Virus record (IMG/VR): IMGVR_UViG_3300047510_001118
Location: 1-64,000 of that record
DNA: 64,000 bases
Strand: one strand, 5' to 3'
Shown piece by piece: positions 2,942-63,227 of the stretch. How positions within the stretch are numbered: position 1 is the stretch's first letter; each line of letters opens with the position of its first letter. The position numbers and the translations under genes were made by a program. The notes under the pieces are model-generated. The model was not told the DNA's origin, ran no database searches, and saw only the letters and a program-made list of their open reading frames with translations.

Positions 2942-2945
2942 AAAT

Positions 2946-3511: not shown

Positions 3512-3518
3512 AAAAAAT

Positions 3519-3593: not shown

Positions 3594-3617
3594 GTGATTC
3601 TATTTATGAAAACTATT

Positions 3618-3692: not shown

Positions 3693-3768
3693 ATATAGAA
3701 GCACACAGACTAACTACCAGAAACACTTATAGTGTCATTACTCGGTTCGAGCCAATGTGCTTTTATAT
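3693..3768 (-). ncRNA. inter-tRNA structured RNA A (shared closing stem)
   Basis: ATATAAAAGCACA...TGTGCTTCTATAT terminal stem. Confidence 0.5.
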
Positions 3769-3857
3769 GGTGGAGCCTGAAGGAATTGAACCTAACTGCC
3801 AGCCACCCAACAATATTATGGCAACGGATTTACAGTCCGCCGTTGGGAACAGGCTCC
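3768..3857 (-). tRNA. atypical tRNA-Tyr(GTA)
   Basis: Anticodon arm GCGGA-CTGTAAA-TCCGT, 8-bp acceptor, no D-stem, long V-arm. Confidence 0.7.
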
Positions 3858-3872
3858 AAACTTACGCGAAAT

Positions 3873-3884
3873 TTTTAAAGAACA
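3873..3884 (-). promoter_or_regulatory. boxA-like antitermination element TGTTCTTTAAAA
   Basis: Matches rrn boxA consensus TGCTCTTTAACA; lies downstream of the internal promoter. Confidence 0.6.
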
Positions 3885-3890
3885 AACAGT

Positions 3891-3983
3891 TGGTGGAAGG
3901 TGTGGGATTCGAACCCACGCACCGCATTTTGTACGGTGGACGGTTTAGCAAACCGCTGCCTTCGGCCACTCAGCCAACCTTCC
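3891..3983 (-). tRNA. tRNA-Ser(GCT)
   Basis: Long V-arm, anticodon GCT. Confidence 0.95.
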
Positions 3984-3995
3984 TAACTTGTGTCT

Positions 3996-4024
3996 ATTAT
4001 ACGACAAGTTTTTTAACTTGTCAA
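3996..4024 (-). promoter_or_regulatory. internal sigma70 promoter TTGACA-17-TATAAT with palindromic spacer
   Basis: TTGACAAGTTAAAAAACTTGTCGTATAAT. Confidence 0.85.
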
Positions 4025-4032
4025 CTACTTTA

Positions 4033-4122
4033 TGGCGGAAGCGGTGAGATTCGAACTCACGGACCATTTCTGATCGTCTGTTTTCAAGACAGGTGCAATA
4101 AACCGGACTCTGCCACACTTCC
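4033..4122 (-). tRNA. tRNA-Ser(TGA)
   Basis: Long V-arm, anticodon TGA, G73. Confidence 0.95.
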
Positions 4123-4130
4123 ATAAATTT

Positions 4131-4211
4131 TGGTGCCCCTAATCGGATTCGAACCGATAGTTATGACACTCCTTTTGAGAGAGCCGCCTTTACCAATTTG
4201 GCCATAGGGGC
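4131..4211 (-). tRNA. tRNA-Leu(CAA)
   Basis: Anticodon loop CTCAAAA; reduced V-arm. Confidence 0.9.
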
Positions 4212-4216
4212 AATAC

Positions 4217-4288
4217 TGGCGCCTCTGGAGAGATTCGAACTCCCATAACCTGGTTTAGAAGACCTGGCACTGCTCCATCAGCAGAGGC
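4217..4288 (-). tRNA. tRNA-Arg(TCT), compact D-arm
   Basis: Anticodon loop CTTCTAA; 72 nt. Confidence 0.8.
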
Positions 4289-4291
4289 TAC

Positions 4292-4375
4292 TGGTGCGAG
4301 AGACGGGACTCGAACCCGTATGCCTTTCGACGGCAGATTTTAAGTCTGCTGCGTATACCATTCCGCCACTCTCGC
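4292..4375 (-). tRNA. tRNA-Leu(TAA)
   Basis: Cloverleaf, anticodon TAA. Confidence 0.95.
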
Positions 4376-4379
4376 ATAC

Positions 4380-4455
4380 TGGTGCCGCTCCTTGGGATCG
4401 AACCAAGTTCCTCGGTGCTTCAAACCGGTGCAATGACCACATTTGCTAAAGCGGC
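4380..4455 (-). tRNA. tRNA-Phe(GAA)
   Basis: Anticodon loop TTGAAGC. Confidence 0.9.
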
Positions 4456-4504
4456 AAAAGAAAAACTCTACACACTAACTATGTTAACCGAGTAGAGCCA
4501 TAAT

Positions 4505-4579
4505 TGGGGTGAAGCCGGGAATCGAACCCTGCCTTACTGTTTCACAGACAGCCGTGCGTACCACTACACTAGCAACACC
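4505..4579 (-). tRNA. tRNA-His(GTG)
   Basis: G-1:C73, anticodon GTG. Confidence 0.92.
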
Positions 4580-4585
4580 ATTGTT

Positions 4586-4659
4586 TGGTATCGCGTACGG
4601 GGATCGAACCCGCCTGACTAGGTTGAAAGCCTAGTGACCTCCCAGAAGTCCAACGCGAT
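4586..4659 (-). tRNA. tRNA-Glu(TTC), second copy, divergent
   Basis: Anticodon loop CTTTCAA. Confidence 0.88.
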
Positions 4660-4665
4660 GTTGTT

Positions 4666-4743
4666 TGGCACCCCTGGAAGGACTTGAACCTTCGACTCCT
4701 ACCTTCGCAAGGTAGTACTCTGATTCCGCTGAGTTACAGGGGT
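4666..4743 (-). tRNA. tRNA-Arg(GCG)
   Basis: CTACC-TTGCGAA-GGTAG anticodon arm. Confidence 0.85.
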
Positions 4744-4905
4744 ATTAATACGTTCTAAAGCATCACGTCGCATTTTAAACGGACGATGCTCATCGGGACG
4801 ATGTACAATCAAATATTCCACACCGTCAATGTTTTCGGTCACACGGGTATCGTCACAGACAAATCGCTCATTATTAAAACGATTTTTAAACATAGTTTGT
4901 TTCAT
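4699..4905 (-). CDS. small hypothetical protein; 3' end overlaps tRNA-Arg(GCG)
   Basis: AAGGAG SD; 68 aa. Confidence 0.65.
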   Translation of the reverse strand: MKQTMFKNRFNNERFVCDDTRVTENIDGVEYLIVHRPDEHRPFKMRRDALERINTPVTQRNQSTTLRR

Positions 4906-4927
4906 GACAATCTCCTTAAAGTTGTTT

Positions 4928-5002
4928 TGGCCGGCCTGGAGAGATTCGAACTCCCGACTGCTGGTTTCGAAGACCAGAACTCTTCCACTGAGCTACAGGC
5001 CG
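4928..5002 (-). tRNA. tRNA-Arg(TCG)
   Basis: Anticodon loop CTTCGAA. Confidence 0.92.
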
Positions 5003-5010
5003 ATAATGTT

Positions 5011-5084
5011 TGGCACGGGTGCTAGGGCTCGAACCTAGAATAACAGAGTCAAAGTCTGTGGTGTTACCATTACACTACACCCGA
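5011..5084 (-). tRNA. tRNA-Gln(TTG)
   Basis: Anticodon TTG, G73. Confidence 0.93.
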
Positions 5085-5091
5085 TCAGAAC

Positions 5092-5166
5092 TGGTGGTAA
5101 TGGAAAGAGTCGAACTTTCACAGCGCACCGTATGAAGGTGTTGCACTACCATTATGCTACATTACC
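5092..5166 (-). tRNA. tRNA-CAT (elongator Met or Ile2)
   Basis: Anticodon CAT; lacks initiator C1:A72 mismatch and 3 G-C pairs. Confidence 0.85.
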
Positions 5167-5319
5167 ATATAGAAACATACTAATGAACCAGCCTGACGCA
5201 GCCGTACGCTTGGCAGATCGTTTCCAATCTGTTTCTCGCTTTTCTCGGTACTCTGTATGTTCAGGATTCCGCAGTCCTCAATACAATCGCTTGTAAGGGC
5301 AACTAATATGTTTTTATAT
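5167..5319 (-). ncRNA. inter-tRNA structured RNA B (shared closing stem)
   Basis: ATATAAAAACATA...TATGTTTCTATAT terminal stem, internal hairpins. Confidence 0.55.
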
Positions 5320-5392
5320 GGTAGGGGCACAGAGAATCGAACTCTGATTAATAGGTTAAAAGCCTACTACTTTGCCGTTAAGTTATACCCCC
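5319..5392 (-). tRNA. tRNA-Lys(TTT)
   Basis: Anticodon TTT. Confidence 0.93.
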
Positions 5393-5518
5393 ACGATCTT
5401 ACCACTCTTGTCACTTTCCATAACAGGATCTCCTATTTTAAATTTTTGTCGATAAAATATATCAATACTACAAGCATGAGTAAAACGGCCACCGCCCCAT
5501 TTTAGTTCCCCTTATAGT

Positions 5519-5593
5519 TGGTGCCTAATCTTGGGAACGATCCAAGGACCTATGCGTTATCAACACATTGCTCTACCACTGAGCTAATTAGGC
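5519..5593 (-). tRNA. tRNA-Ile(GAT)
   Basis: Anticodon GAT; variant T-loop ATCGTTC. Confidence 0.9.
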
Positions 5594-5799
5594 AAAATGA
5601 ATTTGTAAGTAGTTGCCCCATCGTTATAGCAACCATTCACCCGTGTAATTAAGCCGGCCGGGACTCGGTACGTCACTTGGAATACTTAACCAACGTGTCT
5701 ATTTTTTGCTAGGGTTTTGCGCCCCCCGTTGCCTTACTATAGTCAGCTCTTCGAAGAAGCCTGCTATAGTGTCTTTCTCTTGCTGACACTTACAAAACT

Positions 5800-5877
5800 T
5801 GGAGTGAGGAGTCGGATTTGAACCGACGGCTTTACAGTTTTGCAGACTGTTGCATTGGGCCTCTCTGCCATCCTCAC
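5800..5877 (-). tRNA. tRNA-Cys(GCA)
   Basis: Anticodon GCA, U73. Confidence 0.93.
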
Positions 5878-5883
5878 ATTACT

Positions 5884-5960
5884 TGGCGACCCGGGAAGGA
5901 TTTGAACCTCCGACATTTGGTTTTGGAGACCAACGTTCTGCCAGACTGAACTACCGAGCC
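5884..5960 (-). tRNA. tRNA-Trp(CCA)
   Basis: Anticodon CCA, G73. Confidence 0.93.
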
Positions 5961-8335: not shown

Positions 8336-11300
8336 ATGTCAAAGAAGCAGATTAAAGATTATAGATTTGTACCAGGAGCGATTGCCGAAGCGGCAAATCA
8401 ATATCCTAATGCTGTAGAATTAATTACAGCAAATAAAGATTATATCATTGAAGAAATTATTGGTTACCTAACATTTGCGTCAAATACACCAAGTGTTGCT
8501 CCTGCGTCCTATCCTAATGCTATAGCCCAACTAACAAATAACAAAGAGTTTATCAAAGAAGAAGCCAGTGCTTGGATCGAAGCACAAATCGATGCTGCCA
8601 CAGAGGGACAGCCGTTTTTTGAATATAACTATGACGAAGTCATAAAAGCAAAGTGTAAGCGAGATGTTGGTTATCTAGTTGATGCTTGGATAACGGATAT
8701 AACTGGTGGTGGTAATGCTGACACTATCCGTATCGGAAGAACATATTTCCGTAATGGTGATCCGCAACTACTAAGCCCTACAGAAGAAACAGCGGTTTAT
8801 ACATTTTTAAAAACTTTAATCAATACTAATGTATTGCCTAGAGTAGCGGCAACTTCTTTACAAAGTCCTGTTGTTGCGGCACAGAGTCTTACAGGTTCGG
8901 CAGCAGAGGCTGCGGCTATTACACGGTTTAATACTTTGATTGATATTATTCGTAACTTGATTCCTAACGGATTAACAAGTTTACCTGCTATCTCTTACAA
9001 CTATAATTCAGCATTTATTGGCTATACCTATGATACTGCCAAGTGCCGTAGAGACAGCGGATATATCTTAGACAGTTATATCTATGATATGACCTATGGT
9101 GGAAATAGTTCTACTTGGTATGTAAGTTCCAGATATTGGATACAAGGAATAGCACAGGTCGACGGCAGTCGCCAGCCAGAAATTCTAGCACATACATTTG
9201 CTAGAAATCTCATTAACAATTACATATTACAAAAAATCTTATATCCATCATATCAACTAGTTGAAACCCAAACAGATGTAGGAGGTCCAGTTGAAGCCAG
9301 TTCTTCGACTAAAGTTACTACATTGTCTAATATTCTATTGAATACGATTCAAAACGGTCTAAGCTCATTGCCACGCAACGATGCGCCCGGAAGTCAAGGT
9401 GGAGGATTAATGCCTAACACTGTGGCATTGATCGATGCTAACAAGAGATTTATTGCCGAAGAAGCGGCCGCATATATCGCATATAATGTTACTAATAATA
9501 TTAGTCCATTTGTATTCTTCACATATAATGCTGCCAAATGTGCTAGAGATGTTAGTTATATCATTGAAGGTTACATCACAGATCTTGCCAATGGTGGAAA
9601 TAGACAAACAGTACACAATGCCAGCAAGTATTGGGAAAATGGTGTAGCCGCAGTCGATGGCAGTCGTGAACCAGAAATTTCAACTCATACATTTATTCGA
9701 GATCTAATAGACAACTACATTTTAAATAATGTTGCCTATCCAGCCAAACAAACAGCAGTTCCGCAGACATTTATCAATTCTATACAATCAGAAGTGTTTG
9801 CTCAGACTAGAATTAAAGAACTGTCAAATACGGTATTAGAAGTTATAGAATATGGATTAGATTATCTTCCTACTACGGTTTCAAATCGAGGGTACATTAA
9901 AATACAGGGATTCTATAAACTCAAAGATTTCTTGTTAGTAACAAACACTAATAGAAACATCATACTTTATAACTTTGCTGATCCTAACTCAGCGGCTGAA
10001 GTCACCTACAGTGAATTCGCAGATTCTGACTTCCCGGCATTTGGAGCCACTGCTGATAAAATTACTACATTAACTTTTGATGTAGATACCACAGGTATGA
10101 TGGTCACTGACAATATTCAAATATTTGTCGAAGAAAAATATACTACAGTTAAACAAAGTCCAATTGGTTCAGATGCCATGGAACGTATGAAAGTTGGTAT
10201 TCCCCAGGCCATGCTTGACGCTGACTTTGAATACGGTCTACAACCCACCAAATGGCAGACAATCAGTTTGATGAGAAGTTATCCATCTGTTTATGAAATT
10301 CCAGGCACCGACGTACAGGTTTCGTTAGTGGTCACAGATGCCAGCGCAGGAACAGCAGGTATTGGTGCTAGCCTCATTACAGTTACCACTGTTGCGGCAC
10401 ACGAATTAGTCGTAGGAGATCCTATCACAATCAAGGCGCTGGCTAACACTGTTACTGGATTTAGCCGAGCAGAGGGTAGTTTCTTGGTTAACAGCGTACC
10501 AGCCGCTAATCAATTTACTTTCTATGCTAAGAGTAAAGTTGGTACTACTAATGGACAAGTATTGGCCACAACATATACACAGTTGCGTAAGGGTGATTTT
10601 TATACCGGCGCATCGGTCGGTCAACCGACATTTAGTGTGGCTTCAAACGGAAGTTCGGGATCCTTTACTACAAACTTAATCACTCTCAGCGGCAGCGACT
10701 TTATTGCGTTTACAGGTACAGCACCGCCAGTAGGAGCCCCCTTAATTGCCGCCGGCATTAATACTGGTACACAAATAACTGCGGTTGTAGGATCCGGTGG
10801 TACTGCGGCTTCAACTACTTTGATTTCAAATGCTGAAGTCGGCGAGTCGACAATTACAGTTAACAATACCACTGGCATATCACCAGGTTTAGCCTTTGAT
10901 CGGGGTGATGGTAGATCTATACGTGTTACTCAAGTTTTAGGTTCAGCAATCAGCCTCAGCGATCCATTAACAGCAAGGATCCTAGGAACTAACGCTTCAT
11001 ACACTGGCCTAACTGGAACATACTCCGGAGTTGACGGAAGTGGAGCAGTATTCACAGTTTCTAGAGCAGGCGCAACATATTCTGCTTCTCCTTCGAATCC
11101 TGGTGAAGGTTATTCCGTTGGTCAAACCTTTACAATTTCAGGAACAAGTTTAGAAGGAACAGCACCGGCTAATAATGCTACATTAACTATCACAGCCGCA
11201 AGTAATAGAAAGACTGTGGCTAGTTTTGATCCATTATCATTATTTGGCGGAGCAAATTATTCACAGACAACTAATATTGCCACTACTGGCGGCGACGGTA

Positions 11301-14300
11301 CAGGATTAACAGTTGATGTTACCCTAGATGGAAACGGAACTATTCTAACTGTAGCAGTTAATAATGCTGGTCAGAATTACAATGTTGGCAATGTGGTCAA
11401 CATTAGACAGGGTCGTGTACAGCAGGCCAATATTGATCAAGCGGGCACAGGATACACTACAGGAACAAAAGCAACTAGTACTGCTGGTTCTGGTTCTGGA
11501 CTAACTTTATCTGTTACTGCTAACAACATCAATGGTGTAGGCGGATTAAACTTAGTCAGTGCTGGTACAGGTTACAGTTCAGGATCTGCTAATACCACAG
11601 GTGGTGGCGGTACTGGCTTGGTCGTTAACGTCCAAGCAGAACCTGTTGGCGGAGCATCTACTATTTCTCTTACAAATCCGGGATCAGGCTACAGTGACGG
11701 GTCATCTAGCACTACTGCTATAACTGGCTCAGGATCTGGATTGAGTGTTAACCTTACTACCAGCGGCGGCGTAATTTCTAATGCTACCATAATGCCTAGC
11801 ATGAAAGGTTCTGGATATGTTGTTGGTAACCAATTAACTGTTAACGGCGGCAACGGTGATGCTGTTATCACAGTCACAGCAGTTACAAACGGACAAGTAG
11901 TTGGTCTAACTGTTGATCAACAGGGTAGCGGTTATACCAACGGTGGAACTATCACTGTCACGGGCGGTAGCGGCACTGCTACAGCAACAATTACCTCAGT
12001 AACCAATGGACAGATTACACAAATTGCTGTGGTAAATCCTGGATTAGGTTACGTTAACGGTGACACTGTTAACATATTAGGTGGTACTGGTGGTACCGCT
12101 ACTATCGCTAATATTGAAGGCGAAGCAGTTATCGCAATAGCATCAGTTAACGCAGGTGGTCTAATACAAACAGTCAGCGCAACTGGAACACCGGTTAGTG
12201 CGCCAACTAGAAATTTCTTAAGTGCTGTTACATTGAGCGAAGTAACATCGGCGCAGATTGCATCTGGCGTAACAGTGACCTATAGTGCTATTGCTACAAT
12301 CCAAGTTGACTTTGCTTCAGAGCACGGATTCGTTCCAGGAAATAGTATTATTACTTCTATTTCTAGTACTGGTTCAAATCATCAATTGGCAGCAGGCCCA
12401 TTCTATATTGAATCAACGCCTTTGCCTACAAGAATTCGATATACGGCTAGAACTTCAGGAACAGTTGACACGAATAGTGTTATAACAGGAACTATATATG
12501 CTAGGCCCGACAGTTATTATGTACATAGACCATTTGATGGTGGTGTACAGTTAGGTACAGGCGGACCACAACACGGTGCTGGTGCTGTTCGTCAAAGTAA
12601 AAAATATATCCGTTATCAATCTGGTAAGGGAGTTATGTATAACACCGGAGCCCTATTTGCTCCCAGTTACGATCTTAGAAGTGCCACAGCCAGCGGCACA
12701 GCAGTTGGATCTCTGATCACGATTACCACAGACGACACCGACCACGGATGCCAAGTCGGTGCTGGTATTAATATCACTGGTATCGCTACCAGTGGTTACA
12801 ATGGACAATATATCGTATCCGACGTCATTGATGAAAGAACTCTAAGAGTTCAAGCAATTAGAACACTAGGAGCAACATCTGCGGTATTAACTAACAGTGC
12901 TCAGATAGCAGTTCGTAGTTGGCACGGTGCTACGGTCCGAGCAGGTGCGTTTGACGACCAAAACGGAATGTTCTGGCAGTATGACGGACAGAGATTGGCA
13001 GTTGTAAAGCGTTCAAGTACTTTCCAAATTGCTGGAGTTATCAGCGTTAACTCGGATTCAAATGCTGTTACAGGAACTAATACACGATTTACGCAACAAT
13101 TAGCCGCAGGGGATAAAATTGTTCTACGCGGTATGAGTCATACTGTAACTCGTGTGATCAGCGATACATCGATGACCGTTGCTCCTGACTATAGAGGTGT
13201 TAATAATGTATCCAATGTAAAAATTTGTAAAACAGTTGATGATTTATATCCTCAAGAATATTGGAATACAGATCCATGTAACGGATCAGGACCCAGCGGG
13301 TACAATATTGACATCACTAAAATGCAGATGATCGGACTACAGTATACATGGTATGGTGCTGGATTTATTGATTTTATGCTACGTGGTGCTGATGGAAATT
13401 ATGTATTTGCTAATCGTATTCGAAATAGCAACGTGAACACAGAAGCGTTTATGCGTACAGGTAACTTACCAGTTAGATACGAAGTTACCAATGAAGGAGC
13501 AAAGAGTGTATTGACTTCGGCAATGACTGCTTCTCAAACAACAATTCCATTAGAAGATACATATTGGTTCCCTAATAACGGTATTGTAATGATTAACAAT
13601 GAGTTGATTGCCTATACTGGTAGAACTTCTACACAGTTAACTGGCTGTACTAGAGCTACACAGATGAGTTTATTTGTAGGCGGTAGCCAAAGAAGTTTCT
13701 CAGCAGGTTCTGCTAGTACGCATTCAGCAGGAGCAGGTGTTATTCTAGTTAGCAATACTGTTACTCCGATTATTAGTCACTGGGGTAGTGCGTTTTTAAC
13801 AGACGGTAGATTTGACGAAGACCGTGGCTACATTTTTAACTATACTGCTACTAACGTCAGTGTGTCGACTACTAGACAAACTGCGTTCTTAATTCGATTA
13901 GCACCTAGCGTATCAAATGCTATTGTTGGTGACTTAGGCGATAGAGAATTATTAAACAAGGCGCAGTTGCTATTACAATCGATTGAAATTACTGCTGATA
14001 CAGGTACAGGAGGTATGGTTATTGAAGGTGTATTAAATCCTCAAAACTATCCTATTAATCCAGCAGACATCACATGGAACGGATTACAAAATGCTGCACA
14101 AGGTGGTCAGCCAAGTTTTGCGCAGATCGCTCCGGGTGGTTCAGTTAATTGGTCCAGCGGGGTTGAAACTACAACAGCCTCTGCCACCACATCTAGCAGT
14201 TTAACAGGATCTGTAACTGCTAGAATGGTTTATAATAACAGTGGTAATTTGACTACTAGTCCAACTCGAAGTATCACAACAAATCAACGTAAAATTTACT

Positions 14301-14971
14301 TTTTAGAATCAGACTATCAAACGTATATCAATACTAACGGTTTATTAGCAGGAGATGAAATTTCTGGTACAGGTCTAGCATCCGGTACCACGATTACTAG
14401 TTTTGATGGGTTTTCAACAAATATTATTGGAACCCTATATAGAGGTGTTAATATTAGTGCTTTTCCAACAAGCAACGTTGGAACTGTTGCTTCGCTAACT
14501 GTAACTCGATCTTATAGGACCAGCTCAACTAGTACTATACATTTCCAACAAGTAAGTTGGGAAAGTAGTGGAGCCAAGGCTGGTACTGAAGTCACTGACG
14601 TGTTGTTTCCGGCTAATACATTTGTAAGCTCGGCAACATTAAGTAATTTCTACGGCACTAGTTATTATAGAGTAAGTTTTAGCCAAACATCAACGTCTAC
14701 AGCAATAACTCCTGGAACAACGACGATTACATTTAAGTTTGGTCAACCGCCATATGCTAAACCAGGAGAAACTGTGTTCTCATTCGTGGCATCGCCCGGC
14801 GGAACATCAAATCTTAATCTTGATGAACTTAAAGAATTAACTAATACTACATTAGGTGGTAGAGGTACATTCCCAAATGGTCCAGACGTGCTAGCCATTA
14901 ACGTTTATAAAGCCGCAGGTACGGCTATCAATGCTAATATTGTGTTACGTTGGGGCGAAGCGCAGGCCTAA
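8336..14971 (+). CDS. large virion structural protein (baseplate/tail fibre-like), 2211 aa
   Basis: Triplicated N-terminal KCxRDxxY repeats, many G-x-GY beta repeats. Confidence 0.75.
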   Translation: MSKKQIKDYRFVPGAIAEAANQYPNAVELITANKDYIIEEIIGYLTFASNTPSVAPASYPNAIAQLTNNKEFIKEEASAWIEAQIDAATEGQPFFEYNYDEVIKAKCKRDVGYLVDAWITDITGGGNADTIRIGRTYFRNGDPQLLSPTEETAVYTFLKTLINTNVLPRVAATSLQSPVVAAQSLTGSAAEAAAITRFNTLIDIIRNLIPNGLTSLPAISYNYNSAFIGYTYDTAKCRRDSGYILDSYIYDMTYGGNSSTWYVSSRYWIQGIAQVDGSRQPEILAHTFARNLINNYILQKILYPSYQLVETQTDVGGPVEASSSTKVTTLSNILLNTIQNGLSSLPRNDAPGSQGGGLMPNTVALIDANKRFIAEEAAAYIAYNVTNNISPFVFFTYNAAKCARDVSYIIEGYITDLANGGNRQTVHNASKYWENGVAAVDGSREPEISTHTFIRDLIDNYILNNVAYPAKQTAVPQTFINSIQSEVFAQTRIKELSNTVLEVIEYGLDYLPTTVSNRGYIKIQGFYKLKDFLLVTNTNRNIILYNFADPNSAAEVTYSEFADSDFPAFGATADKITTLTFDVDTTGMMVTDNIQIFVEEKYTTVKQSPIGSDAMERMKVGIPQAMLDADFEYGLQPTKWQTISLMRSYPSVYEIPGTDVQVSLVVTDASAGTAGIGASLITVTTVAAHELVVGDPITIKALANTVTGFSRAEGSFLVNSVPAANQFTFYAKSKVGTTNGQVLATTYTQLRKGDFYTGASVGQPTFSVASNGSSGSFTTNLITLSGSDFIAFTGTAPPVGAPLIAAGINTGTQITAVVGSGGTAASTTLISNAEVGESTITVNNTTGISPGLAFDRGDGRSIRVTQVLGSAISLSDPLTARILGTNASYTGLTGTYSGVDGSGAVFTVSRAGATYSASPSNPGEGYSVGQTFTISGTSLEGTAPANNATLTITAASNRKTVASFDPLSLFGGANYSQTTNIATTGGDGTGLTVDVTLDGNGTILTVAVNNAGQNYNVGNVVNIRQGRVQQANIDQAGTGYTTGTKATSTAGSGSGLTLSVTANNINGVGGLNLVSAGTGYSSGSANTTGGGGTGLVVNVQAEPVGGASTISLTNPGSGYSDGSSSTTAITGSGSGLSVNLTTSGGVISNATIMPSMKGSGYVVGNQLTVNGGNGDAVITVTAVTNGQVVGLTVDQQGSGYTNGGTITVTGGSGTATATITSVTNGQITQIAVVNPGLGYVNGDTVNILGGTGGTATIANIEGEAVIAIASVNAGGLIQTVSATGTPVSAPTRNFLSAVTLSEVTSAQIASGVTVTYSAIATIQVDFASEHGFVPGNSIITSISSTGSNHQLAAGPFYIESTPLPTRIRYTARTSGTVDTNSVITGTIYARPDSYYVHRPFDGGVQLGTGGPQHGAGAVRQSKKYIRYQSGKGVMYNTGALFAPSYDLRSATASGTAVGSLITITTDDTDHGCQVGAGINITGIATSGYNGQYIVSDVIDERTLRVQAIRTLGATSAVLTNSAQIAVRSWHGATVRAGAFDDQNGMFWQYDGQRLAVVKRSSTFQIAGVISVNSDSNAVTGTNTRFTQQLAAGDKIVLRGMSHTVTRVISDTSMTVAPDYRGVNNVSNVKICKTVDDLYPQEYWNTDPCNGSGPSGYNIDITKMQMIGLQYTWYGAGFIDFMLRGADGNYVFANRIRNSNVNTEAFMRTGNLPVRYEVTNEGAKSVLTSAMTASQTTIPLEDTYWFPNNGIVMINNELIAYTGRTSTQLTGCTRATQMSLFVGGSQRSFSAGSASTHSAGAGVILVSNTVTPIISHWGSAFLTDGRFDEDRGYIFNYTATNVSVSTTRQTAFLIRLAPSVSNAIVGDLGDRELLNKAQLLLQSIEITADTGTGGMVIEGVLNPQNYPINPADITWNGLQNAAQGGQPSFAQIAPGGSVNWSSGVETTTASATTSSSLTGSVTARMVYNNSGNLTTSPTRSITTNQRKIYFLESDYQTYINTNGLLAGDEISGTGLASGTTITSFDGFSTNIIGTLYRGVNISAFPTSNVGTVASLTVTRSYRTSSTSTIHFQQVSWESSGAKAGTEVTDVLFPANTFVSSATLSNFYGTSYYRVSFSQTSTSTAITPGTTTITFKFGQPPYAKPGETVFSFVASPGGTSNLNLDELKELTNTTLGGRGTFPNGPDVLAINVYKAAGTAINANIVLRWGEAQA

Positions 14972-38223: not shown

Positions 38224-40104
38224 TCAATTCTTTTTGGCTTCAGTAAACTCAGCATCAACAACATCGTTATCAGAGGACGATGTTGTAGCCTCAGCAGTTT
38301 TTGCGGCTAAAATTGGTTGTATAGCCACTGCTAGGTCGCTGGTCTTTTGAACGATGATATCTTTGTCGTCACCCTTGACTGCTTCTAAAACAGCATCACA
38401 GGCTTCTTCAATTTTACCTTTTTGTTCTTCAGTAAGTTTATCTTTTACTTCATCCAAATCTTTTTTAACTGTATGTACCTGTGCTTCAGCAGAATTTCTA
38501 GCGTCAATCAACTCTCGTTGTTTACGATCACTTTCAGCATTGGCTTCTGCTTCTTGAACCATGCGTTCAATTTCTTCCTTACTTAGGCCGCTGTCGCTCT
38601 TGATAGTGATTTGATTTTCTTTGCCGGTGTTTTTATCTTTAGCACTGATTTTCATAATGCCGTTGGCATCAATATCAAATGTAACTTCAATCTGTGGCTG
38701 ACCACGACGTGCTGGAGCAATGCCATCTAACTTAAACTCGCCGAGTAGTTTATTGTATTGGAACAGTTCTCGTTCACCTTGACCAACTTTAATATCCACT
38801 GCTGGCTGATTATCTTCTGCTGTACTAAACACTTGACTAGCCTTGGTAGGGATAGTTGTATTCTTTTGTACAAGTTTAGTAAACACACCGCCCATAGTTT
38901 CAATGCCTAGACTCAATGGTGTTACGTCTAACAATAAAACGTCTGTGCGATCGCCTGCTAGTACACTACCTTGAATAGCCGCACCAACTGCTACTGCTTC
39001 GTCTGGATTAACATCACGACGTGGAGCCTTGCCAAACAGACGTTCAACTTCTTCTTGTACCTTAGGCATACGTGTCTGACCACCGACTAAGATAACTTCG
39101 TCGATGTCAGCGGCTGTTACACCCGCATCTTTCATAGCAATGCGGCAAGGCGCCAATGAACGGTTAATCAAATCTTCAACTAGTGCTTCTAGTTTACTTC
39201 TTGTAATTTTAACAATAAGGTGTTTTGGACCACTGGCATCTGCTGTAATGTATGGTAGGTTGACCTCAGTCTGTGAACTATTTGAAAGTTCAATCTTGGC
39301 TTTTTCTGCGGCATCTTTTAATCTTTGTAGAGCCAGTGTATCAGATTTTAAATCTATACCTTGTTCTTTCTTAAACTCATCAACTAAGAAATCCATGATG
39401 CGTTGATCAAAGTCTTCACCACCTAGGAATGTATCGCCGTTTGTTGACAATACTTCAATTTGTTTATCGCCGTCGACATCAGCAATCTCGATAATAGATA
39501 CGTCAAACGTACCACCACCTAAATCGTATACAGCAATCTTTCGATCCTTTTTATCAGTTTTATCAACACCGTAGGCTAGTGCGGCTGCTGTTGGTTCGTT
39601 GATAATACGCAAGACTTCTAAGCCAGCAATCTGTCCAGCATCTTTGGTAGCCTGGCGTTGTGCGTCATTAAAATATGCTGGTACTGTGATAACTGCTTGA
39701 GTTACTTCGTGACCTAAATAGTCTTCAGCAGTCTTTTTCATCTTGCGAAGAACTTCTGCTGAAATCTGTGGAGGTGCTAGTTCTTTGTCTTGAGCCTTAA
39801 CCCAAGCATCACCGTTTTTTGCTTCGATGATACTGTAAGGTATAAGATCAATTTCTTTTTGTACAGCCTGCTCTTTAAATTTACGACCAATTAGTCGTTT
39901 AGACGCATAGATTGTATTTTTTGGGTTTGTAACCGCTTGACGCTTTGCTGATGCGCCAACTAGAATTTCATCTGAAGTATAGGCGACGATACTGGGTGTA
40001 GTACGGGCACCTTCAGAGTTTTCAATTACTTTGGAATTTCCTGCCTCGATGATAGCCACGCATGAGTTGGTGGTTCCGAGGTCAATACCGATGACTTTGC
40101 TCAT
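38224..40104 (-). CDS. dnaK: chaperone DnaK
   Basis: [18 protein letters not shown]; start corrected. Confidence 0.97.
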
Positions 40105-40185
40105 ATTGTTATCTCCTTTAATTAAGCAAGATTTAAGTTTGGGCAACTGCCCGTTTATAGGACCCGAAGCATCCTACAATTTTAT

Positions 40186-41457: not shown

Positions 41458-41839
41458 CTACTTCCTCTTTTAAGTTTGGAAAATCGTAAAAGCGATTTTT
41501 ATTTAAAAGTGTCCAATCGCTTTTCATATTCAAACATCTATAATATGTATTAGGTAAGCTCAAAATATAGGATAAGAAGTGATTTACATCTTCAGACAAA
41601 TTATCTATATCAACAATTATATAATCTACCATTTTGGCTGTAGATAACAGCCATTTTATATCTTTTTCTGTACCAGTATAAATGTAGATGTTTATGTGAT
41701 CTTCTAATTCAACCGCATAGTTTTCTATTTTTTCTTTTGTATCCTGCGACGGAGTTATTACTAAAATAGAATGAGATTGATCAAAAATTATATCAGGGGC
41801 TGTAATTACTTTGATTTTTTTTGTTGAATTCTCTGCCAT
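41444..41839 (-). CDS. hypothetical protein
   Basis: ORF in operon. Confidence 0.7.
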
Positions 41840-41876
41840 AATGTCTGTGTGTCTTGTTCAGAATTTTGGACGTATC

Positions 41877-43241
41877 CTAACTGTCCTTGGTCTTCTGAAT
41901 CTGATGATCCCCTTGCTTGATTATGTAGGTTGTCTTTTTTTTTGATTCTTCTTGTTGCTGTTCTTCTGCCCACTTCTTAGCCTCGGCTACTGGGTCCACT
42001 TCTTCTTGCTTGTTAAAATCTTGATCCCACGGTAATACTTTAATTTCACCAGCATCAAAGGCACGTTGTATTTCATATATATCAGCATCATGATTTTTAT
42101 CTCTCCATTGTTGGAGAGCATCAGTCCATTCTACATTGGCTAATACTTTTTCTTTTTCAACGGCTTTTTCGGCCTCTTCGATCATTTTGTTCCACTGATC
42201 TAATGGTAGGTCTTCTACTACTTCTTGAGGCTTATCTTCCCAGGGTTTTCCTTCTGGGTATAGATCTTTCTCTTCTGCTAAAAATTTAAAATCTTCTTCT
42301 TCTTTTTTAGGCTCTGTTATTTCCTGCTGTTTTGGAAATGGCCATAACGCACTTGTAAATGGCCAAGAACTTTGTTTAGTGTCTTCTTGATCTTTTACAT
42401 TTTCTAATTCGTAAAGGTCACTAGACATTTCTTGATTGTCTTCTTGAGGGGTTTCTTCTTTTTGCTGACGGAACCATTGGAAACTGTACTGACTGGCCAA
42501 TAACAGAATAACAGCCAATGGATCAAATACAATAACAATAATAATGATTACCCAAGTTACTGCTTTTTCTAATATATTAGCATCTGGGTTATCACCGTAG
42601 ATAAAATTAGCAATATATTTTATTGGACCAACTTCTGCTTCCACCTTGCGTACTTCAGCGGCGATGGGTGTCCGTTCTTCGCTAAGTTGACTAATTGTTT
42701 TCTGTTCGGCGGCAATCTCAGAAAGTAATCTAGAGCGTTCTTTGGCCTGCCCTCTACGTAACGCAACTGCCTTGTCCGCACCTTTTTCGTCTGTGCTTCG
42801 ACCCATAACTTGGTCCACAGCCTCATCCATTTGTTTGAGTGCTTTGCGATTAGCATCTATATTGTCCTTTGCTGTCTTTATCTTTTCATCATATACGGCA
42901 ATCTTACTTTGTACATCGCCGCTGACTAAACTTTGATCGCTGTGTGCTTTACTTAGGAATCCAAAAATACCCATCGAAGTAATGAGCATCAATATAGCAA
43001 TAGCGGCTAGTAGATAACCTCTAATAAAGTTAGGTGCTCTAGACCAATTTTGTTTTAACCAAACAGTAGCGGCTAGTTTACTAACTTCTAAGGCCACGCC
43101 CATAACGATGATGGGAATAACTGCCGCAGAGAAAATGGCCACTAGGCCTGCTACGCTGTAGTAAATGGCTACAGCGGATATTGTTAATCCGCTGAATAAT
43201 GTTAGCCACGCTATTAATTTGTCGCTGGTTTCATATCGCAT
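41877..43241 (-). CDS. membrane protein with coiled coil and acidic tail
   Basis: Three N-terminal TM segments plus one later TM. Confidence 0.75.
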   Translation of the reverse strand: MRYETSDKLIAWLTLFSGLTISAVAIYYSVAGLVAIFSAAVIPIIVMGVALEVSKLAATVWLKQNWSRAPNFIRGYLLAAIAILMLITSMGIFGFLSKAHSDQSLVSGDVQSKIAVYDEKIKTAKDNIDANRKALKQMDEAVDQVMGRSTDEKGADKAVALRRGQAKERSRLLSEIAAEQKTISQLSEERTPIAAEVRKVEAEVGPIKYIANFIYGDNPDANILEKAVTWVIIIIVIVFDPLAVILLLASQYSFQWFRQQKEETPQEDNQEMSSDLYELENVKDQEDTKQSSWPFTSALWPFPKQQEITEPKKEEEDFKFLAEEKDLYPEGKPWEDKPQEVVEDLPLDQWNKMIEEAEKAVEKEKVLANVEWTDALQQWRDKNHDADIYEIQRAFDAGEIKVLPWDQDFNKQEEVDPVAEAKKWAEEQQQEESKKKTTYIIKQGDHQIQKTKDS

Positions 43242-56075: not shown

Positions 56076-56411
56076 TCAAGAGGCCATGGCATTATTTGTT
56101 GCTCGTTGTGCCATTTGAGCTACCACATCACTGCCTGTGTTGCCATCAACTGGACCTTGTGCTGGTGCTTCTTTTTTGGTTTTTAATTCAATGCCTTCGC
56201 CATCGAAACGCTTTACATATTTTTGAATGTTTGGATCGGCATCGAATACTGGTTTAAATGTTTCGTTGTCAAATTCTTCTTGGCCCATATGGACCATGAA
56301 TTTATTAAATTTTTCCCACGGATATTTTGCTGTAGTATTTGCCGCATCGGCTTTACCTACTAGACTTCTAAGAACGAGAACCAAGTCCGAAATGAGTTCG
56401 GACTCAGTTAC
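56076..56411 (-). CDS. -1-frame extension of the upstream acidic protein
   Basis: No ATG or SD; open from the slippery site A AAA AAG. Confidence 0.65.
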   Translation of the reverse strand, partial: VTESELISDLVLVLRSLVGKADAANTTAKYPWEKFNKFMVHMGQEEFDNETFKPVFDADPNIQKYVKRFDGEGIELKTKKEAPAQGPVDGNTGSDVVAQMAQRATNNAMAS

Positions 56412-57292
56412 TTTTTTTTTGGTGCTAATAGACTGGCAAGTTTTCTGCTGAACTCTACTGATTCACGAGTAGCACGACCTGCTGGCTCTTCACCGCCCGC
56501 CGCTGATGCTGCCGCGCCTGCCTCTTCACCGCCTTCTGGTTCTGGTGATTCTTCTTCGCCTGCGGTTGGCTCTTCTGCTGGCTCTTCTGCTGGCTCAGCA
56601 CCCATAGATTGACCGCCATCGCCTTCGCCTGTTAAGATTGCCACTGCTTGTGTTAGTTGTTGACGCGAACCTTCTAATGCTGTATAGATGGTTGCTAATG
56701 CTGGTTTGACAACGCCTTCAAATTCCATTGATGTGTCGCTGCCTAATTCGTCTCTTATAGAGTCAATAAGTTCTAACATTGATTCGGCCTGCATATTTGC
56801 TGTGTCTTCCATCCAGCCTGTAATACGATCAACCATGTCGCGAGCGGCCATAATCAATTCTGCTTTTTCTTCTTCGCCTTCACGCAACACTGATTCAACC
56901 TGTACTGCGGCATCTTCTTTAGATTTGCTGAAATTTACTTTGTTCTGTAGTTCTTCTGGAAGGTCATCAAATGATAATACGCCTTGATCTACTTTTTCTA
57001 GTACCATACGTTCCATGTCTGTGAACTCAACAACTTCTTGACTGCGTTCTTCGATAGCACGATTTAAGACATCTAGGAACATCTTATTTTTTGTGTAATC
57101 GTCATTTTCTAAAACTGCGCTAAATCCACCGCTATTTTCAATTTGGTGAATCTTTGTACGCAATTTATTTCGAGCATCTTCTAATTGCTCTAGTGTAAAA
57201 CTATCAAGATTAAGTTTTTGTCCGAAAATTTTACCTACATTTTCGTTTACTATCTGAGCAGTAATTTTTTTGTTAAATTCAGTGACACGCAT
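56408..57292 (-). CDS. acidic virion/scaffold-like protein
   Basis: MRVTEF start, Glu-rich. Confidence 0.75.
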   Translation of the reverse strand: MRVTEFNKKITAQIVNENVGKIFGQKLNLDSFTLEQLEDARNKLRTKIHQIENSGGFSAVLENDDYTKNKMFLDVLNRAIEERSQEVVEFTDMERMVLEKVDQGVLSFDDLPEELQNKVNFSKSKEDAAVQVESVLREGEEEKAELIMAARDMVDRITGWMEDTANMQAESMLELIDSIRDELGSDTSMEFEGVVKPALATIYTALEGSRQQLTQAVAILTGEGDGGQSMGAEPAEEPAEEPTAGEEESPEPEGGEEAGAAASAAGGEEPAGRATRESVEFSRKLASLLAPKKK

Positions 57293-61663: not shown

Positions 61664-61693
61664 TAAAAAAGGACTCTTCGGAGTCCTTTTTTT
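61664..61693. terminator. bidirectional terminator
   Basis: aaaaaaaggactc-ttcg-gagtccttttttt. Confidence 0.9.
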
Positions 61694-63227
61694 ATGCTGT
61701 TGCTGTACTAATAGTTTGTAAATTGTTTAACGCAGTCTGCATTTTAAGTTGAGTAGCGTGTTTGTTAAGTCCTACGCCACCATAGAAACTTTGACCACCT
61801 TTACTTGGAGAAGGTAAACCTGCCCAAATTCTAGATAGACGGTCTAAAAATCTTGTGTCATCTATTCTACCACGTAACCAGTCTTCCAGGCCGGCTTCTC
61901 TTAAAAAGACAATACCCATCTTGTCCTGATTCTCGGCTGTAAATTTATCTTTTGTAGGATCTAGTCCTGCTTTCTTCGCATAGTTAATAGTATTAAAGTG
62001 CATTATTTGATAGCGTCCTGCAGCACTGGAACCTGCTCTACGAGCATGTGCTAACTGATAAGATGCTAACTCTTCCATAGTCATATTTAAAATAGCCGGA
62101 TCACGTTTGCCACCAAACATTATATCATATTGGCCGCCACTTTCTGGACCAGCAACAAAATTAAGCACTTGTCCAACTTTGCCTTTTGTAACAGCATCAA
62201 GTTGTAAAGGTTTGCTGACATCTACCTTGCTTTGAGCTGGTCTAACTTCAGCCTGCGAACTCTTTTTCAATGTAGCCAATAGTTCTGGTTTGGCTTTAAG
62301 CATGGCATTCATCTTATCAACTGTTGCTTTGTCAGCATCACCAGTGGCCGGCAATCCATTCTTTTCTTGGAATGTTCTAATAGCAGCCGTTGTTTCTTTT
62401 CCTTGTAAGCCGTCAACACCAAATTTTGGTAATGGAACACCTAATGCTATCAATGCCTTCTGTACGTCAGCAGTTTGTGGGCTTCTTAAACTTGGTGGAA
62501 CTTCAACTACAAAGGATTGTTTATTAGGATCTTGTTCTTTATCACCTAACCCAACTTTGTTTAATACTTTATTACCAAATCTATCAAGAGAAGATTTTGG
62601 TTCTTTTGGTTCTTCTTTTGAACTTGATCCTGGTTCATTACTTCCAAAAGCAGTTGGTTTGGCTGAACTAACTACCTGTGATGCTACAACCTTATATGTA
62701 GACATACCAGCATGTACACCATCAGTTAGTGGTTTGCCGTTGATGTCAATAATCGGTATACCGCCAAGAGCACTTCTAATTGCAGCACGTACCTCTTCTT
62801 GAAACTCACCACCATAGAACTTGGCTTCTTTACTACCTCGTCCTGGACCGTTAGGGAATAATAAGAAAAGTACTTTTGAAGGTTGCTGTGCGTTAATTCT
62901 ATCTACCACACTGGAAACATCAGATGCGATTGATTGAGCAGTGCGGGATGGTTTTCCCGGAACCATGGCGTTAGCAGTATCGTTGGCTCCTAACGCTACT
63001 AATACCACAGAACCTTTGGGTATTTTTGGAATATTGGCCAACATCTGTTGTGTTCTTGGTGCTGGACCTTTGCTGGCCGCTGAAGGCACTCCTAAATTAA
63101 GCCATTTTACGCCTTTCATTACACCGCCCATTACGCCTACTGCATGTGCGTGGCTGTCACCGATAGCAACATAGACTGGTTCGGGTTCTGATTCAAAAAT
63201 TTGGGTTATAAATTCACGTGCTCTCAT
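61692..63227 (-). CDS. modular cell-wall enzyme: SGNH esterase + PG-binding + lysozyme-like domain
   Basis: GDSH/GAND/DGVH; VDG..G.ET..AI..FQ; ES.G.Y, AAGRYQ, F..ENQD. Confidence 0.85.
   Translation of the reverse strand: MRAREFITQIFESEPEPVYVAIGDSHAHAVGVMGGVMKGVKWLNLGVPSAASKGPAPRTQQMLANIPKIPKGSVVLVALGANDTANAMVPGKPSRTAQSIASDVSSVVDRINAQQPSKVLFLLFPNGPGRGSKEAKFYGGEFQEEVRAAIRSALGGIPIIDINGKPLTDGVHAGMSTYKVVASQVVSSAKPTAFGSNEPGSSSKEEPKEPKSSLDRFGNKVLNKVGLGDKEQDPNKQSFVVEVPPSLRSPQTADVQKALIALGVPLPKFGVDGLQGKETTAAIRTFQEKNGLPATGDADKATVDKMNAMLKAKPELLATLKKSSQAEVRPAQSKVDVSKPLQLDAVTKGKVGQVLNFVAGPESGGQYDIMFGGKRDPAILNMTMEELASYQLAHARRAGSSAAGRYQIMHFNTINYAKKAGLDPTKDKFTAENQDKMGIVFLREAGLEDWLRGRIDDTRFLDRLSRIWAGLPSPSKGGQSFYGGVGLNKHATQLKMQTALNNLQTISTATA

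What the first reader, a model, noticed from the sequence alone, without database searches (positions are those of the whole stretch)
56076..56430. Programmed -1 frameshift in an acidic late protein
ORF 56408-57292 ends CCA AAA AAA AAG TAA, containing the dnaX/IS-type A_AAA_AAG slippery site. Six nt later comes a perfect 8-bp hairpin (AGTCCGAA-CTCAT-TTCGGACT). The -1 frame is open (VTESELISDLVLVLRSL...) straight into ORF 56076-56384, which has no ATG or SD. This predicts 294-aa and about 405-aa products. No tape-measure gene is adjacent, so it may not be the classical G/GT chaperone. Transcriptional slippage on the A9 run is an alternative.
Basis: partly seen in the sequence, partly recalled or inferred. 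Interest (0 to 1): 0.65.

Follow-up and report, generated by a model that had tools for sequence, protein, structure and literature searches.

The report
Conserved A9 slippage site, phage protein
A run of nine A's at the end of a jumbo-phage virion-protein gene is a conserved recoding signal: a net -1 shift lets part of the product carry an extra 111-residue winged-helix-like domain, and whether RNA polymerase or the ribosome makes the shift is still open.

Summary
Gene 56408-57292 (-) ends CCA AAA AAA AAG TAA. A hairpin follows 6 nt after AAG (-16.4 kcal/mol, z -4.7). The -1 frame stays open for 111 more codons, giving 294-aa and 405-aa products.

This is not an assembly error. Contigs from three independent studies carry A9 without indels. 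Of 81 distinct relatives' junctions, 80 keep a run of at least nine A's with the downstream domain out of frame: 75 at -1, and 5 at +1 with A10-A11. The extension is a conserved protein with a confident winged-helix-like fold.

Other lineages encode the same two parts differently. One has a single ORF that still keeps A9. Others have two genes with their own starts.

The genome (278 kb) has only two homopolymers of 9 or more. The second, at 41935-41943, is also a conserved recoding site, without a hairpin or an adjacent stop.

The gene pair is syntenic with PA5oct gp247/gp246, which are virion proteins by mass spectrometry. It is not a G/GT tail chaperone.

For mechanism, the strict nine-A minimum, the +1 and flipped layouts and the second site point to RNA-polymerase slippage as the shared route. 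The in-phase A_AAA_AAG, the adjacent stop and a covarying hairpin point to ribosomal -1 frameshifting as an added route at this site. No RNA data exist to separate them.

The parts
56408..57292 (-). Gene A (P0001, 294 aa), the 0-frame product. It has a helical N-terminal part with a long helical hairpin (residues 113-221), a disordered acidic linker (225-274) and a C-terminal helix (277-289) ending in KKK.
   Evidence: ORF and translation. More than 3,700 metagenomic homologues. AlphaFold model, mean pLDDT 72. Homology to PA5oct gp247, a 'virion structural protein' by ESI-MS/MS (27% identity over 160 residues, E 6e-8, same gene order).
56412..56420 (-). A9 run, the slippage site. Together with G 56411 it contains the in-phase heptamer A_AAA_AAG (56417-56411).
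   Evidence: Sequence. One of only two runs of 9 or more in 278 kb. A run of 9 or more is kept in 80 of 81 distinct junctions at 36-77% protein identity, and the codon before the run always ends in A although its amino acid varies (S, P, T, Q, N). A9 seen in contigs of three other studies.
56408..56410 (-). 0-frame stop TAA directly after the slippery AAG.
   Evidence: The stop follows the run directly in 74 of the 80 junctions that have a run, as TAA in 73 and TAG in one (L088); the exceptions are the +1 clade and L118.
56379..56409 (-). RNA hairpin. The perfect 8-bp core is 56404-56397 paired with 56391-56384, with a 5-nt loop, starting 6 nt after AAG. The outer pairs extend it to 13 bp.
   Evidence: -16.4 kcal/mol, z -4.71. 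Hairpins are enriched downstream of the run in relatives: 57% of junctions fall in the top 5% of their locus's windows, and 26% have none. In a 26-sequence clade an 11-bp stem starts 6 nt after AAG, with 93.5% of cells paired against about 40% in slid controls and 5 of 11 pairs changed on both sides. No Rfam family.
56076..56411 (-). The -1 frame extension: 111 codons plus the stop at 56078-56076. P0002 is this stretch plus the three Lys codons. It has an N-terminal helix, a small winged-helix-like domain, a disordered stretch and a C-terminal helix.
   Evidence: Translation. The frame relation and the protein are conserved in relatives (HMM E-values 1e-16 to 1e-46 in the shifted frame). Codon-position differences of 0.50/0.43/0.62. 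Model pLDDT about 90 over residues 10-80. Winged-helix matches are modest (Foldseek E 0.12, VIA-align Z 5-6). The family has 538 clusters in a 1.8-billion-protein library.
41877..43241 (-). Second gene with the same motif (454 aa; membrane N-terminus, acidic C-terminus). Its A9 run is at 41943-41935 (GAA TCA AAA AAA AAG ACA). The alternative -1 tail runs to 41806.
   Evidence: Twenty-six distinct homologues keep A9 with a short 0-frame tail and a long -1 tail. Four keep A9 in another phase, with the long tail in frame and the short tail at +1. Fourteen have no run and carry both tail motifs in one ORF. No downstream hairpin (0 of 28 in the top 5%).

Best explanation
This is a genuine, conserved recoding site.

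Products. Standard decoding of gene A stops right after CCA AAA AAA AAG and gives a 294-aa helical, acidic protein that is probably virion-associated. In a fraction of products the frame is shifted by a net -1 within the A9 run. The same polypeptide then continues ...PKKK-VTESEL... for 111 more residues, adding a small winged-helix-like domain (405 aa in total).

Mechanism. The shared mechanism in this phage group is slippage on the homopolymer itself. I take RNA-polymerase slippage to be the common denominator: the nascent A-tract realigns on the T9 template and one extra A is added, which is equivalent to a -1 frame change. At this site the in-phase A_AAA_AAG, the stop codon next to it and the hairpin 6 nt downstream most likely add ribosomal -1 frameshifting on top.

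My split: both routes contribute 0.45, transcription only 0.25, ribosome only 0.25.

Purpose. The purpose is a fixed ratio of a protein with and without its partner domain. Other lineages achieve this with two adjacent genes.

Shown versus inferred. Shown: conservation of the run, of the frame relation and of the extension as a protein; alternative layouts; hairpin covariation. Inferred: that either kind of slippage actually occurs, its efficiency, and the virion role.
For: Conservation of the site.
- Of 81 distinct junctions, 80 have a run of at least nine A's (A9 67, A10 11, A11 3 counting both layouts). The downstream domain is at -1 in 75 and at +1 in 5.
- Neighbouring synonymous sites vary freely, but the two Lys codons are always AAA. 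The preceding codon always ends in A although it codes S, P, T, Q or N.

The extension is translated.
- It is conserved as protein.
- Third-position changes are in excess.
- The fold is confident.
- There is no conserved start codon or SD. Most of the 80 junctions with a run have no ATG, GTG or TTG in the extension's frame within 45 nt after the run, and none has one upstream of it.

The fused protein exists as one ORF in one lineage.
- P0201/L221 is 517 aa and still keeps TCA AAA AAA AAG, with stops close by in both other frames. This is the layout of Thermus dnaX.

Pointers to RNA polymerase.
- Nine is the length at which bacterial RNA polymerase slips efficiently, and insertions of one A predominate (PMC5009743, PMC5574713).
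- The +1 clade has longer runs (A10-A11) and comes from several metagenomes.
- L118 keeps A9 in another phase.
- The only other run of 9 or more in the genome is a second conserved recoding site, with no hairpin and no adjacent stop. Some of its lineages have the frames flipped.
- No phage RNA polymerase was found, and the relative PA5oct uses the host enzyme (PMC7318152).

Pointers to the ribosome.
- The heptamer is in phase in 74 of 80 junctions.
- The stop is directly adjacent.
- The hairpin has a 6-nt spacer here. It is enriched in relatives and covaries.
- The phage's only tRNA-Lys has anticodon UUU.

Assembly. A9 is confirmed in contigs of three other studies.
Against: No RNA or protein data exist.
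- No RNA run holds this sequence.
- The runs that were laid are contigs, which hide rare length variants.
- The junction peptide PKKKV is the same for both mechanisms.

Against a large ribosomal share.
- 26% of lineages have no hairpin.
- In some clades the hairpin lies 12-32 nt away, too far for a classical stimulator.

Against a transcription-only view.
- A downstream RNA hairpin cannot act on a polymerase that has not yet transcribed it, so its covariation needs another explanation.

Single or weak observations.
- The flipped layout (L221) and the lineage without a run (L008) are single contigs each.
- The host, and therefore its polymerase and tRNA pool, is unknown.
- The virion role rests on distant homology to PA5oct gp247. 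That MS list also includes enzymes such as ribonucleotide reductase.
Confidence: 0.6

Rival explanations
1. Purely ribosomal programmed -1 frameshifting. Tandem slippage of tRNA-Lys on A_AAA_AAG is stimulated by the 3' hairpin and the adjacent stop. The mRNA is uniformly A9.
For: The heptamer is in phase, the spacer is 6 nt and the hairpin is stable. The hairpin is enriched in relatives and covaries. The stop is directly adjacent in nearly all junctions. The phage carries tRNA-Lys(UUU) only. The layout closely resembles E. coli dnaX (PMC5009743).
Against: It does not explain why the run is never shorter than 9. It does not explain the +1 clade with A10-A11, the lineage where the long form is in frame yet A9 is kept, or the hairpin-free lineages. 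It does not explain the second A9 site, which lacks both hairpin and stop and has lineages needing a +1 shift. There is no upstream SD-like stimulator (read).
Confidence: 0.25
2. No recoding. The downstream domain is made as a separate protein by its own initiation, or by termination-reinitiation at the TAA.
For: Some lineages do exactly this. L223 has an SD plus ATG. L222 and L008 have an ATGA overlap. PA5oct has GTG right after TAA. In nine junctions an ATG lies 3 nt after the run.
Against: Here and in most junctions there is no start codon or SD in that frame near the run. The residues encoded straight after the run are conserved: K2, K3 and an invariant E6. The A9 run would have no reason to be conserved. 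A single-ORF fusion exists.
Confidence: 0.04
3. DNA-level phase variation. The A-tract changes length during replication, so subpopulations of genomes encode either the short or the long form.
For: Homopolymers are contingency loci in many bacteria. Related lineages are fixed in different layouts (-1, +1, in frame).
Against: Four assemblies of near-identical strains all carry A9 with no indel. A9 is by far the commonest length across deep divergence. Replication slippage at 9 nt is orders of magnitude rarer than transcriptional slippage (established knowledge; PMC5574713 for the contrast in rates).
Confidence: 0.03
4. Artefact or decay: a sequencing error in a homopolymer, or a recently broken gene.
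For: Homopolymers are error-prone, and the two parts would fuse with one extra A.
Against: The same out-of-frame layout is found in 80 distinct junctions from many metagenomes, and both parts are under protein-level constraint.
Confidence: 0.02

Closest known systems
E. coli dnaX (tau/gamma) -1 programmed ribosomal frameshift
   Same: The same heptamer A_AAA_AAG, a stem-loop about 6 nt downstream, and two products that share an N-terminal part and differ at the C-terminus.
   Different: In dnaX the shift makes the short product; here it makes the long one. There is no upstream SD-like stimulator here. The run is extended to nine A's and that length is conserved. The protein is unrelated, with no AAA+ domain.
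Thermus thermophilus dnaX, Shigella spa13/mxiE and IS elements: programmed transcriptional slippage on A9/T9
   Same: The run is exactly nine A's or more. Stops lie close by in the other frames. Related lineages differ in which product is the unslipped one (L221 and the second site). No structure is needed at the second site.
   Different: Heterogeneous mRNA has not been shown here. Site 1 also has a covarying downstream hairpin, which transcriptional slippage does not use. The setting is a dsDNA jumbo phage, apparently transcribed by the host polymerase.
Phage lambda G/GT tail assembly chaperone frameshift
   Same: A phage gene whose -1 shift near the 3' end adds a second domain at a fixed ratio. 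The arrangement is conserved by position across very divergent phages.
   Different: The gene is not between the tail tube and tape-measure genes. The protein is twice the size of gpG and has no tail-chaperone family match. The slippery site differs (A9G rather than G_GGA_AAG).
Pseudomonas phage PA5oct gp247 and gp246 (Arenbergviridae)
   Same: The gene order is the same: small ORF, helical acidic protein, protein of about 105 aa, exonuclease, tail-spike-like protein, small ORF, ribonucleotide reductase. gp247 is homologous to P0001 over residues 136-288. Both gp247 and gp246 are annotated as found in virions by ESI-MS/MS.
   Different: PA5oct has no A-run: gp246 starts with GTG right after an in-frame TAA. 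The similarity of gp246 to the extension is weak (E 0.005 among four candidates, full-length and collinear).

Membership tests
-1 programmed ribosomal frameshift cassette (X_XXY_YYZ plus spacer plus 3' structure) | Slippery heptamer in the 0-frame phase | tested here: met
   CCA AAA AAA AAG here. In phase as A_AAA_AAG, A_AAA_AAA or A_AAA_AAC in 74 of 80 junctions.
-1 programmed ribosomal frameshift cassette (X_XXY_YYZ plus spacer plus 3' structure) | Stable RNA structure 5-9 nt downstream, supported by covariation | tested here: met
   Here the spacer is 6 nt, the energy -16.4 kcal/mol and z -4.7. In the largest clade, 5 of 11 pairs have changes on both sides. The feature is absent in 26% of lineages and further away in others.
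-1 programmed ribosomal frameshift cassette (X_XXY_YYZ plus spacer plus 3' structure) | Overlapping -1 ORF that is conserved as protein and has no start of its own | tested here: met
-1 programmed ribosomal frameshift cassette (X_XXY_YYZ plus spacer plus 3' structure) | The shift happens on the ribosome, on an mRNA colinear with the DNA | not testable with these tools
   No RNA run holds the sequence. The junction peptide is the same for both mechanisms.
Programmed transcriptional slippage (Thermus dnaX, IS, Shigella type) | Homopolymer of A or T as long as the RNA:DNA hybrid (9 or more), conserved as a run | tested here: met
   A run of 9 or more in 80 of 81 junctions. The wobble position before the run is always A. 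There are only two such runs in the genome and both are conserved.
Programmed transcriptional slippage (Thermus dnaX, IS, Shigella type) | Independence from codon phase and from shift direction among relatives | tested here: met
   The +1 clade with A10-A11, and L118 in another phase. L221 has the long form in frame. At the second site, phase-0 lineages have the short tail at +1. Most junctions share one phase by descent, so this rests on a few lineages.
Programmed transcriptional slippage (Thermus dnaX, IS, Shigella type) | mRNA population heterogeneous in run length while the DNA is uniform | not testable with these tools
   Only DNA runs, kept as contigs, were available.
Tail assembly chaperone G/GT | Position between the major tail or tube gene and the tape-measure gene | tested here: not met
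   The neighbours are an exonuclease, a pectate-lyase tail spike and ribonucleotide reductase. This order is conserved in all loci.
Tail assembly chaperone G/GT | Sequence or family similarity to known chaperones | tested here: not met
   No Pfam match. The only PHROG match is phrog_14154, 'virion structural protein'.
dnaX clamp-loader subunits | AAA+ ATPase domain | tested here: not met
   No Pfam family. The model is all-helical coiled coil.
T4-type major prohead scaffold (gp22) | Gene between the prohead protease and the major capsid protein | tested here: not met
   The protease (PF03420) is at 207541-207984 and the gp23-type capsid gene at 205176-206138. A different 363-aa helical protein lies between them.

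The most novel reading that the evidence does not exclude
In a large clade of uncultured freshwater jumbo phages related to PA5oct, a run of nine A's is a reserved signal for programmed RNA-polymerase slippage. It is avoided everywhere else in the genome. It is used at two genes to make two C-terminal isoforms. Lineages have repeatedly switched which isoform is the unslipped one (-1, +1, in frame, or two separate genes). That would be the Thermus versus E. coli dnaX contrast replayed within one virus family and in virion-associated genes. A further step is more speculative. The invariant V/I-x-E right after the junction may be a cleavage site for the T4-type prohead protease. In that case the helical protein would carry the winged-helix domain into the prohead, where it is released.
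Probability: 0.35. Interest if true: 0.7.

Novelty: new member of a known kind. Interest (0 to 1): 0.55.

Why it matters
Gene callers split this locus into a 294-aa protein and an orphan ORF of about 100 aa in thousands of metagenomic records. Recognising the recoding gives the correct 405-aa product.

The locus is also a natural series for studying how recoding sites arise and are lost. The layouts found are -1, +1, in frame with the run retained, coupled genes, and an SD-driven gene.

Two conserved A9 sites in one genome, one with and one without a hairpin and adjacent stop, make a clean system for separating transcriptional from translational slippage.

I found no paper describing it. The library searched is incomplete, so this is not proof of absence.

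Tried and rejected
Searches that gave nothing useful.
- DNA and protein searches of the cultured-phage collection. These found only the exonuclease of PA5oct-like phages and a partial hit in Sinorhizobium phage Phosso.
- Pfam for both parts: no family.
- Profile searches against PDB sequences: nothing meaningful.
- ESM Atlas look-alikes: only unnamed viral clusters.
- Rfam: no family.

Fold searches.
- For P0001 they gave only generic helical hairpins (Z up to 9.9, below what is informative for coiled coils), plus uncharacterised viral proteins.
- For P0002 they gave winged-helix domains at modest scores only. I use this as a fold label, not as a function.

Ideas considered and rejected.
- The hairpin plus T9 on the opposite strand as an intrinsic terminator. 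The T-tract is 7 nt from the stem in the covarying clade, the outer pairs here are G-U (mismatches on the other strand), and the whole gene block is co-directional.
- P0001 as the major scaffold. A gp22-like gene sits between the protease and the capsid gene elsewhere.
- GrpE-like co-chaperone for the phage DnaK. There is no family match.

Reads.
- No RNA run was found, and the laid runs are contigs only. The read-level test of the mRNA could not be done.

Steps not taken.
- The fused 405-aa product was not folded or searched as one chain. It cannot be given by reference under the tools' rules, so the two parts were handled separately.

Full report
**1. The observation**

On the - strand, ORF 56408-57292 (294 aa, P0001) ends GCA CCA AAA AAA AAG TAA.
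- The A9 run is 56420-56412, the G is 56411 and the stop is 56410-56408.
- After the 6-nt spacer TAACTG come AGTCCGAA, loop CTCAT and TTCGGACT (56404-56384).
- ViennaRNA extends the stem to 13 pairs: -16.4 kcal/mol, z -4.71.
- The -1 frame reads KKK-VTESELISDLVLVLRSL... and runs to the stop at 56078-56076. It adds 111 residues, giving 405 aa.
- The only mechanical start in that frame is a TTG inside the hairpin, without an SD.

**2. Not an artefact and not chance**

The window is the first 64 kb of a 278,126-bp phage record.
- That genome has 78 runs of seven A or T, six of eight and only two of nine or more. These are this run and one at 41935-41943.
- Contigs from three other studies that hold near-identical strains cross the run with no gap.
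- Their three nearby substitutions are two in the loop and one C to U in the stem, which keeps a G-U pair.
- These are contigs, so rare length variants remain possible. No RNA run holds the sequence.

**3. Comparative evidence for recoding**

P0001 has more than 3,700 metagenomic homologues of about 290-340 aa, none of them named. I fetched 136 IMG/VR loci, which give 81 distinct junctions.

Run and frame:
- Eighty junctions have a run of nine A's or more at the end of the gene.
- The homologue of the extension lies at -1 in 75 of them.
- In a clade of five, found in several metagenomes, it lies at +1, and these have A10 or A11.
- The motif holds down to 36% protein identity, while the synonymous sites next to it vary.
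- The two Lys codons before AAG are always AAA.
- The codon before them always ends in A although it encodes S, P, T, Q or N.

The extension is a protein:
- The alignment has invariant W35, F55, G76 and A104.
- HMM E-values in the shifted frame are 1e-16 to 1e-46.
- Third-position changes are in excess.
- The fold is confident, with pLDDT about 90 over residues 10-80.
- Most junctions have no ATG, GTG or TTG in that frame within 45 nt of the run, and none has a conserved SD.

**4. Other layouts of the same two parts**

A profile search of 1.8 billion representative proteins found 538 clusters of the extension family.
- P0201 (517 aa) is a single ORF: the P0001 homologue, then KKK, then the extension.
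- Its DNA (L221) still reads TCA AAA AAA AAG. It is followed by ATA AGT GAA, so the long form is in frame. A -1 or +1 change stops after one or two codons.
- L223 has a separate gene with an SD and ATG.
- L222 and L008 have an ATGA overlap and no run.
- PA5oct has GTG directly after an in-frame TAA.

So the two parts are always neighbours. Lineages differ only in how they are joined.

**5. The second site**

The other A9 (GAA TCA AAA AAA AAG ACA, 41943-41935) lies 52 nt before the stop of a 454-aa membrane protein. Among its homologues:
- Twenty-six distinct sequences keep A9. Their 0-frame tail is short (...Y-I/M-I/V-K...K-T-K-E/D) and their -1 tail is long (...Y-V-Q-N-S/A-E-Q...W-Q-R-I...).
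- Four keep A9 in another phase, with the long tail in frame and the short one at +1.
- Fourteen have no run and carry both motifs in a single ORF.

No hairpin follows this run (0 of 28 in the top 5%). No stop is adjacent.

**6. The hairpin**

Downstream of the run at site 1, the 60-nt window ranks in the most stable 5% of its own locus in 57% of junctions. It is unremarkable in 26%.
- Position and sequence differ among clades.
- In a 26-sequence clade an 11-bp stem begins 6 nt after AAG.
- There, 93.5% of cells pair, against about 40% when the partner is slid.
- Five of 11 pairs show changes on both sides, some of which alter the encoded amino acids.

**7. Mechanism**

Both known routes give the same protein.

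For RNA-polymerase slippage:
- Nine is the length of the RNA:DNA hybrid and the length at which bacterial polymerase slips efficiently in vivo. Single-A insertions, which are equivalent to -1, predominate (PMC5009743; PMC5574713).
- The run is never shorter than nine, although the heptamer needs only six A's.
- Layouts needing +1 coincide with longer runs.
- A9 is kept where the long form is already in frame.
- The second site has neither hairpin nor stop.
- No phage RNA polymerase was detected. The T7-type family search rang in no control genome, so it is uninformative. The beta-subunit family rang in all 14 controls and not here. The record is estimated to be about 75% complete.
- PA5oct depends on the host enzyme (PMC7318152).

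For ribosomal -1 frameshifting at this site:
- The heptamer is in phase.
- The stop is immediately adjacent and conserved.
- The hairpin has classical spacing and covaries.
- The phage's only tRNA-Lys has anticodon UUU.

I conclude that homopolymer slippage is programmed here. The transcriptional route is the common denominator and the ribosomal route is a likely addition at site 1. The shares cannot be set without RNA data.

**8. What the protein is**

P0001 is all-helical. It has a long helical hairpin (residues 113-221), a disordered acidic linker (225-274) and a C-terminal helix. Fold searches are uninformative.

The extension is a small winged-helix-like domain followed by a disordered stretch and a helix.

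Gene order and the PA5oct counterpart:
- The order u241, u90, u66, u148, gene A, extension, exonuclease, tail spike, small ORF, ribonucleotide reductase is conserved in all loci.
- It matches Pseudomonas phage PA5oct. There gp247 (395 aa) is homologous to P0001 (E 6e-8).
- gp247 and the 104-aa gp246 that follows it are annotated as virion proteins by ESI-MS/MS.
- The link between gp246 and the extension is weak.

Head genes:
- The genome has a T4-type prohead protease and a gp23-type capsid gene near 205-208 kb.
- A different gp22-like helical protein lies between them. P0001 is therefore not the major scaffold.

It is not a G/GT chaperone, a dnaX product or a capsid protein. My working view is a virion-associated pair, in which a set fraction of the helical protein carries its partner domain covalently.

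**9. Novelty**

Recoding at A-rich sites is well known. This is a new and very widespread member, in an uncharacterised family of jumbo-phage genes, and it comes with an unusually informative set of natural variants. I found no description of it.

Noticed in passing
window 41806-43241 (- strand); run at 41935-41943: A second conserved A9 recoding site, in a 454-aa membrane protein with an acidic C-terminus. The 0 frame gives a short conserved tail and the -1 frame a longer conserved tail (...YVQNSEQ...LWQRIQ...). Relatives show flipped frames, or a single ORF with both motifs. No hairpin follows the run.
   Followed up: partly
whole genome G000 (278,126 bp): Homopolymers are sharply depleted above 7 nt: 78 runs of seven, 6 of eight and 2 of nine. 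Both runs of nine are A-runs on the coding strand at conserved recoding sites. This is consistent with avoidance of slippage-prone tracts elsewhere.
   Followed up: partly
window 960-5960 (- strand), and genome 113957-114206: There is an array of 27 tRNA genes at the start of the window and 3 more elsewhere. The only tRNA-Lys has anticodon UUU (5319-5392). That is the species that is shift-prone on A_AAA_AAG.
   Followed up: no
P0002 residues 4-6 (window about 56394-56411); P0001 residues 15-17 and 136-139: Conserved hydrophobic-x-Glu motifs: V/I-x-E directly after the shift site (E6 invariant), L-N-E near the N-terminus, and L/I/F-x-E-G before the invariant EGEEEKAE block. They resemble the L/I-x-E cleavage consensus of the T4 prohead protease. 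A Peptidase_S77 gene is present at 207541-207984. Processing is only an inference.
   Followed up: partly
window 38224-40146 (- strand): A phage-encoded DnaK (Hsp70) homologue, 54-68% identical to DnaK genes in assorted phage and bacterial records.
   Followed up: no
L008 3855-4475; P0124, P0132, P0268: In lineages where the extension family is a separate gene, it can sit at the N-terminus of much longer proteins (207+ aa with a membrane segment in L008; 463, 771 and 336 aa elsewhere). The domain therefore seems to be a modular adaptor.
   Followed up: no
genome 205176-209484 (loci L219, L220): A T4-like head module: two small acidic proteins, a very acidic 258-aa protein, a Peptidase_S77 protease, a 363-aa gp22-like coiled-coil protein and a gp23-type capsid protein. 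Together with the synteny to PA5oct, this places the phage among distant relatives of Arenbergviridae and Rak2-like jumbo phages.
   Followed up: partly
window 61692-63227 (- strand): A 511-aa protein that combines a GDSL-type lipase/acylhydrolase domain, a peptidoglycan-binding domain and an endolysin-like C-terminus.
   Followed up: no
window 8336-14971 (+ strand): A 2,211-aa ORF matching virion structural and tail-fibre PHROGs. It is on the opposite strand to most genes of the window.
   Followed up: no
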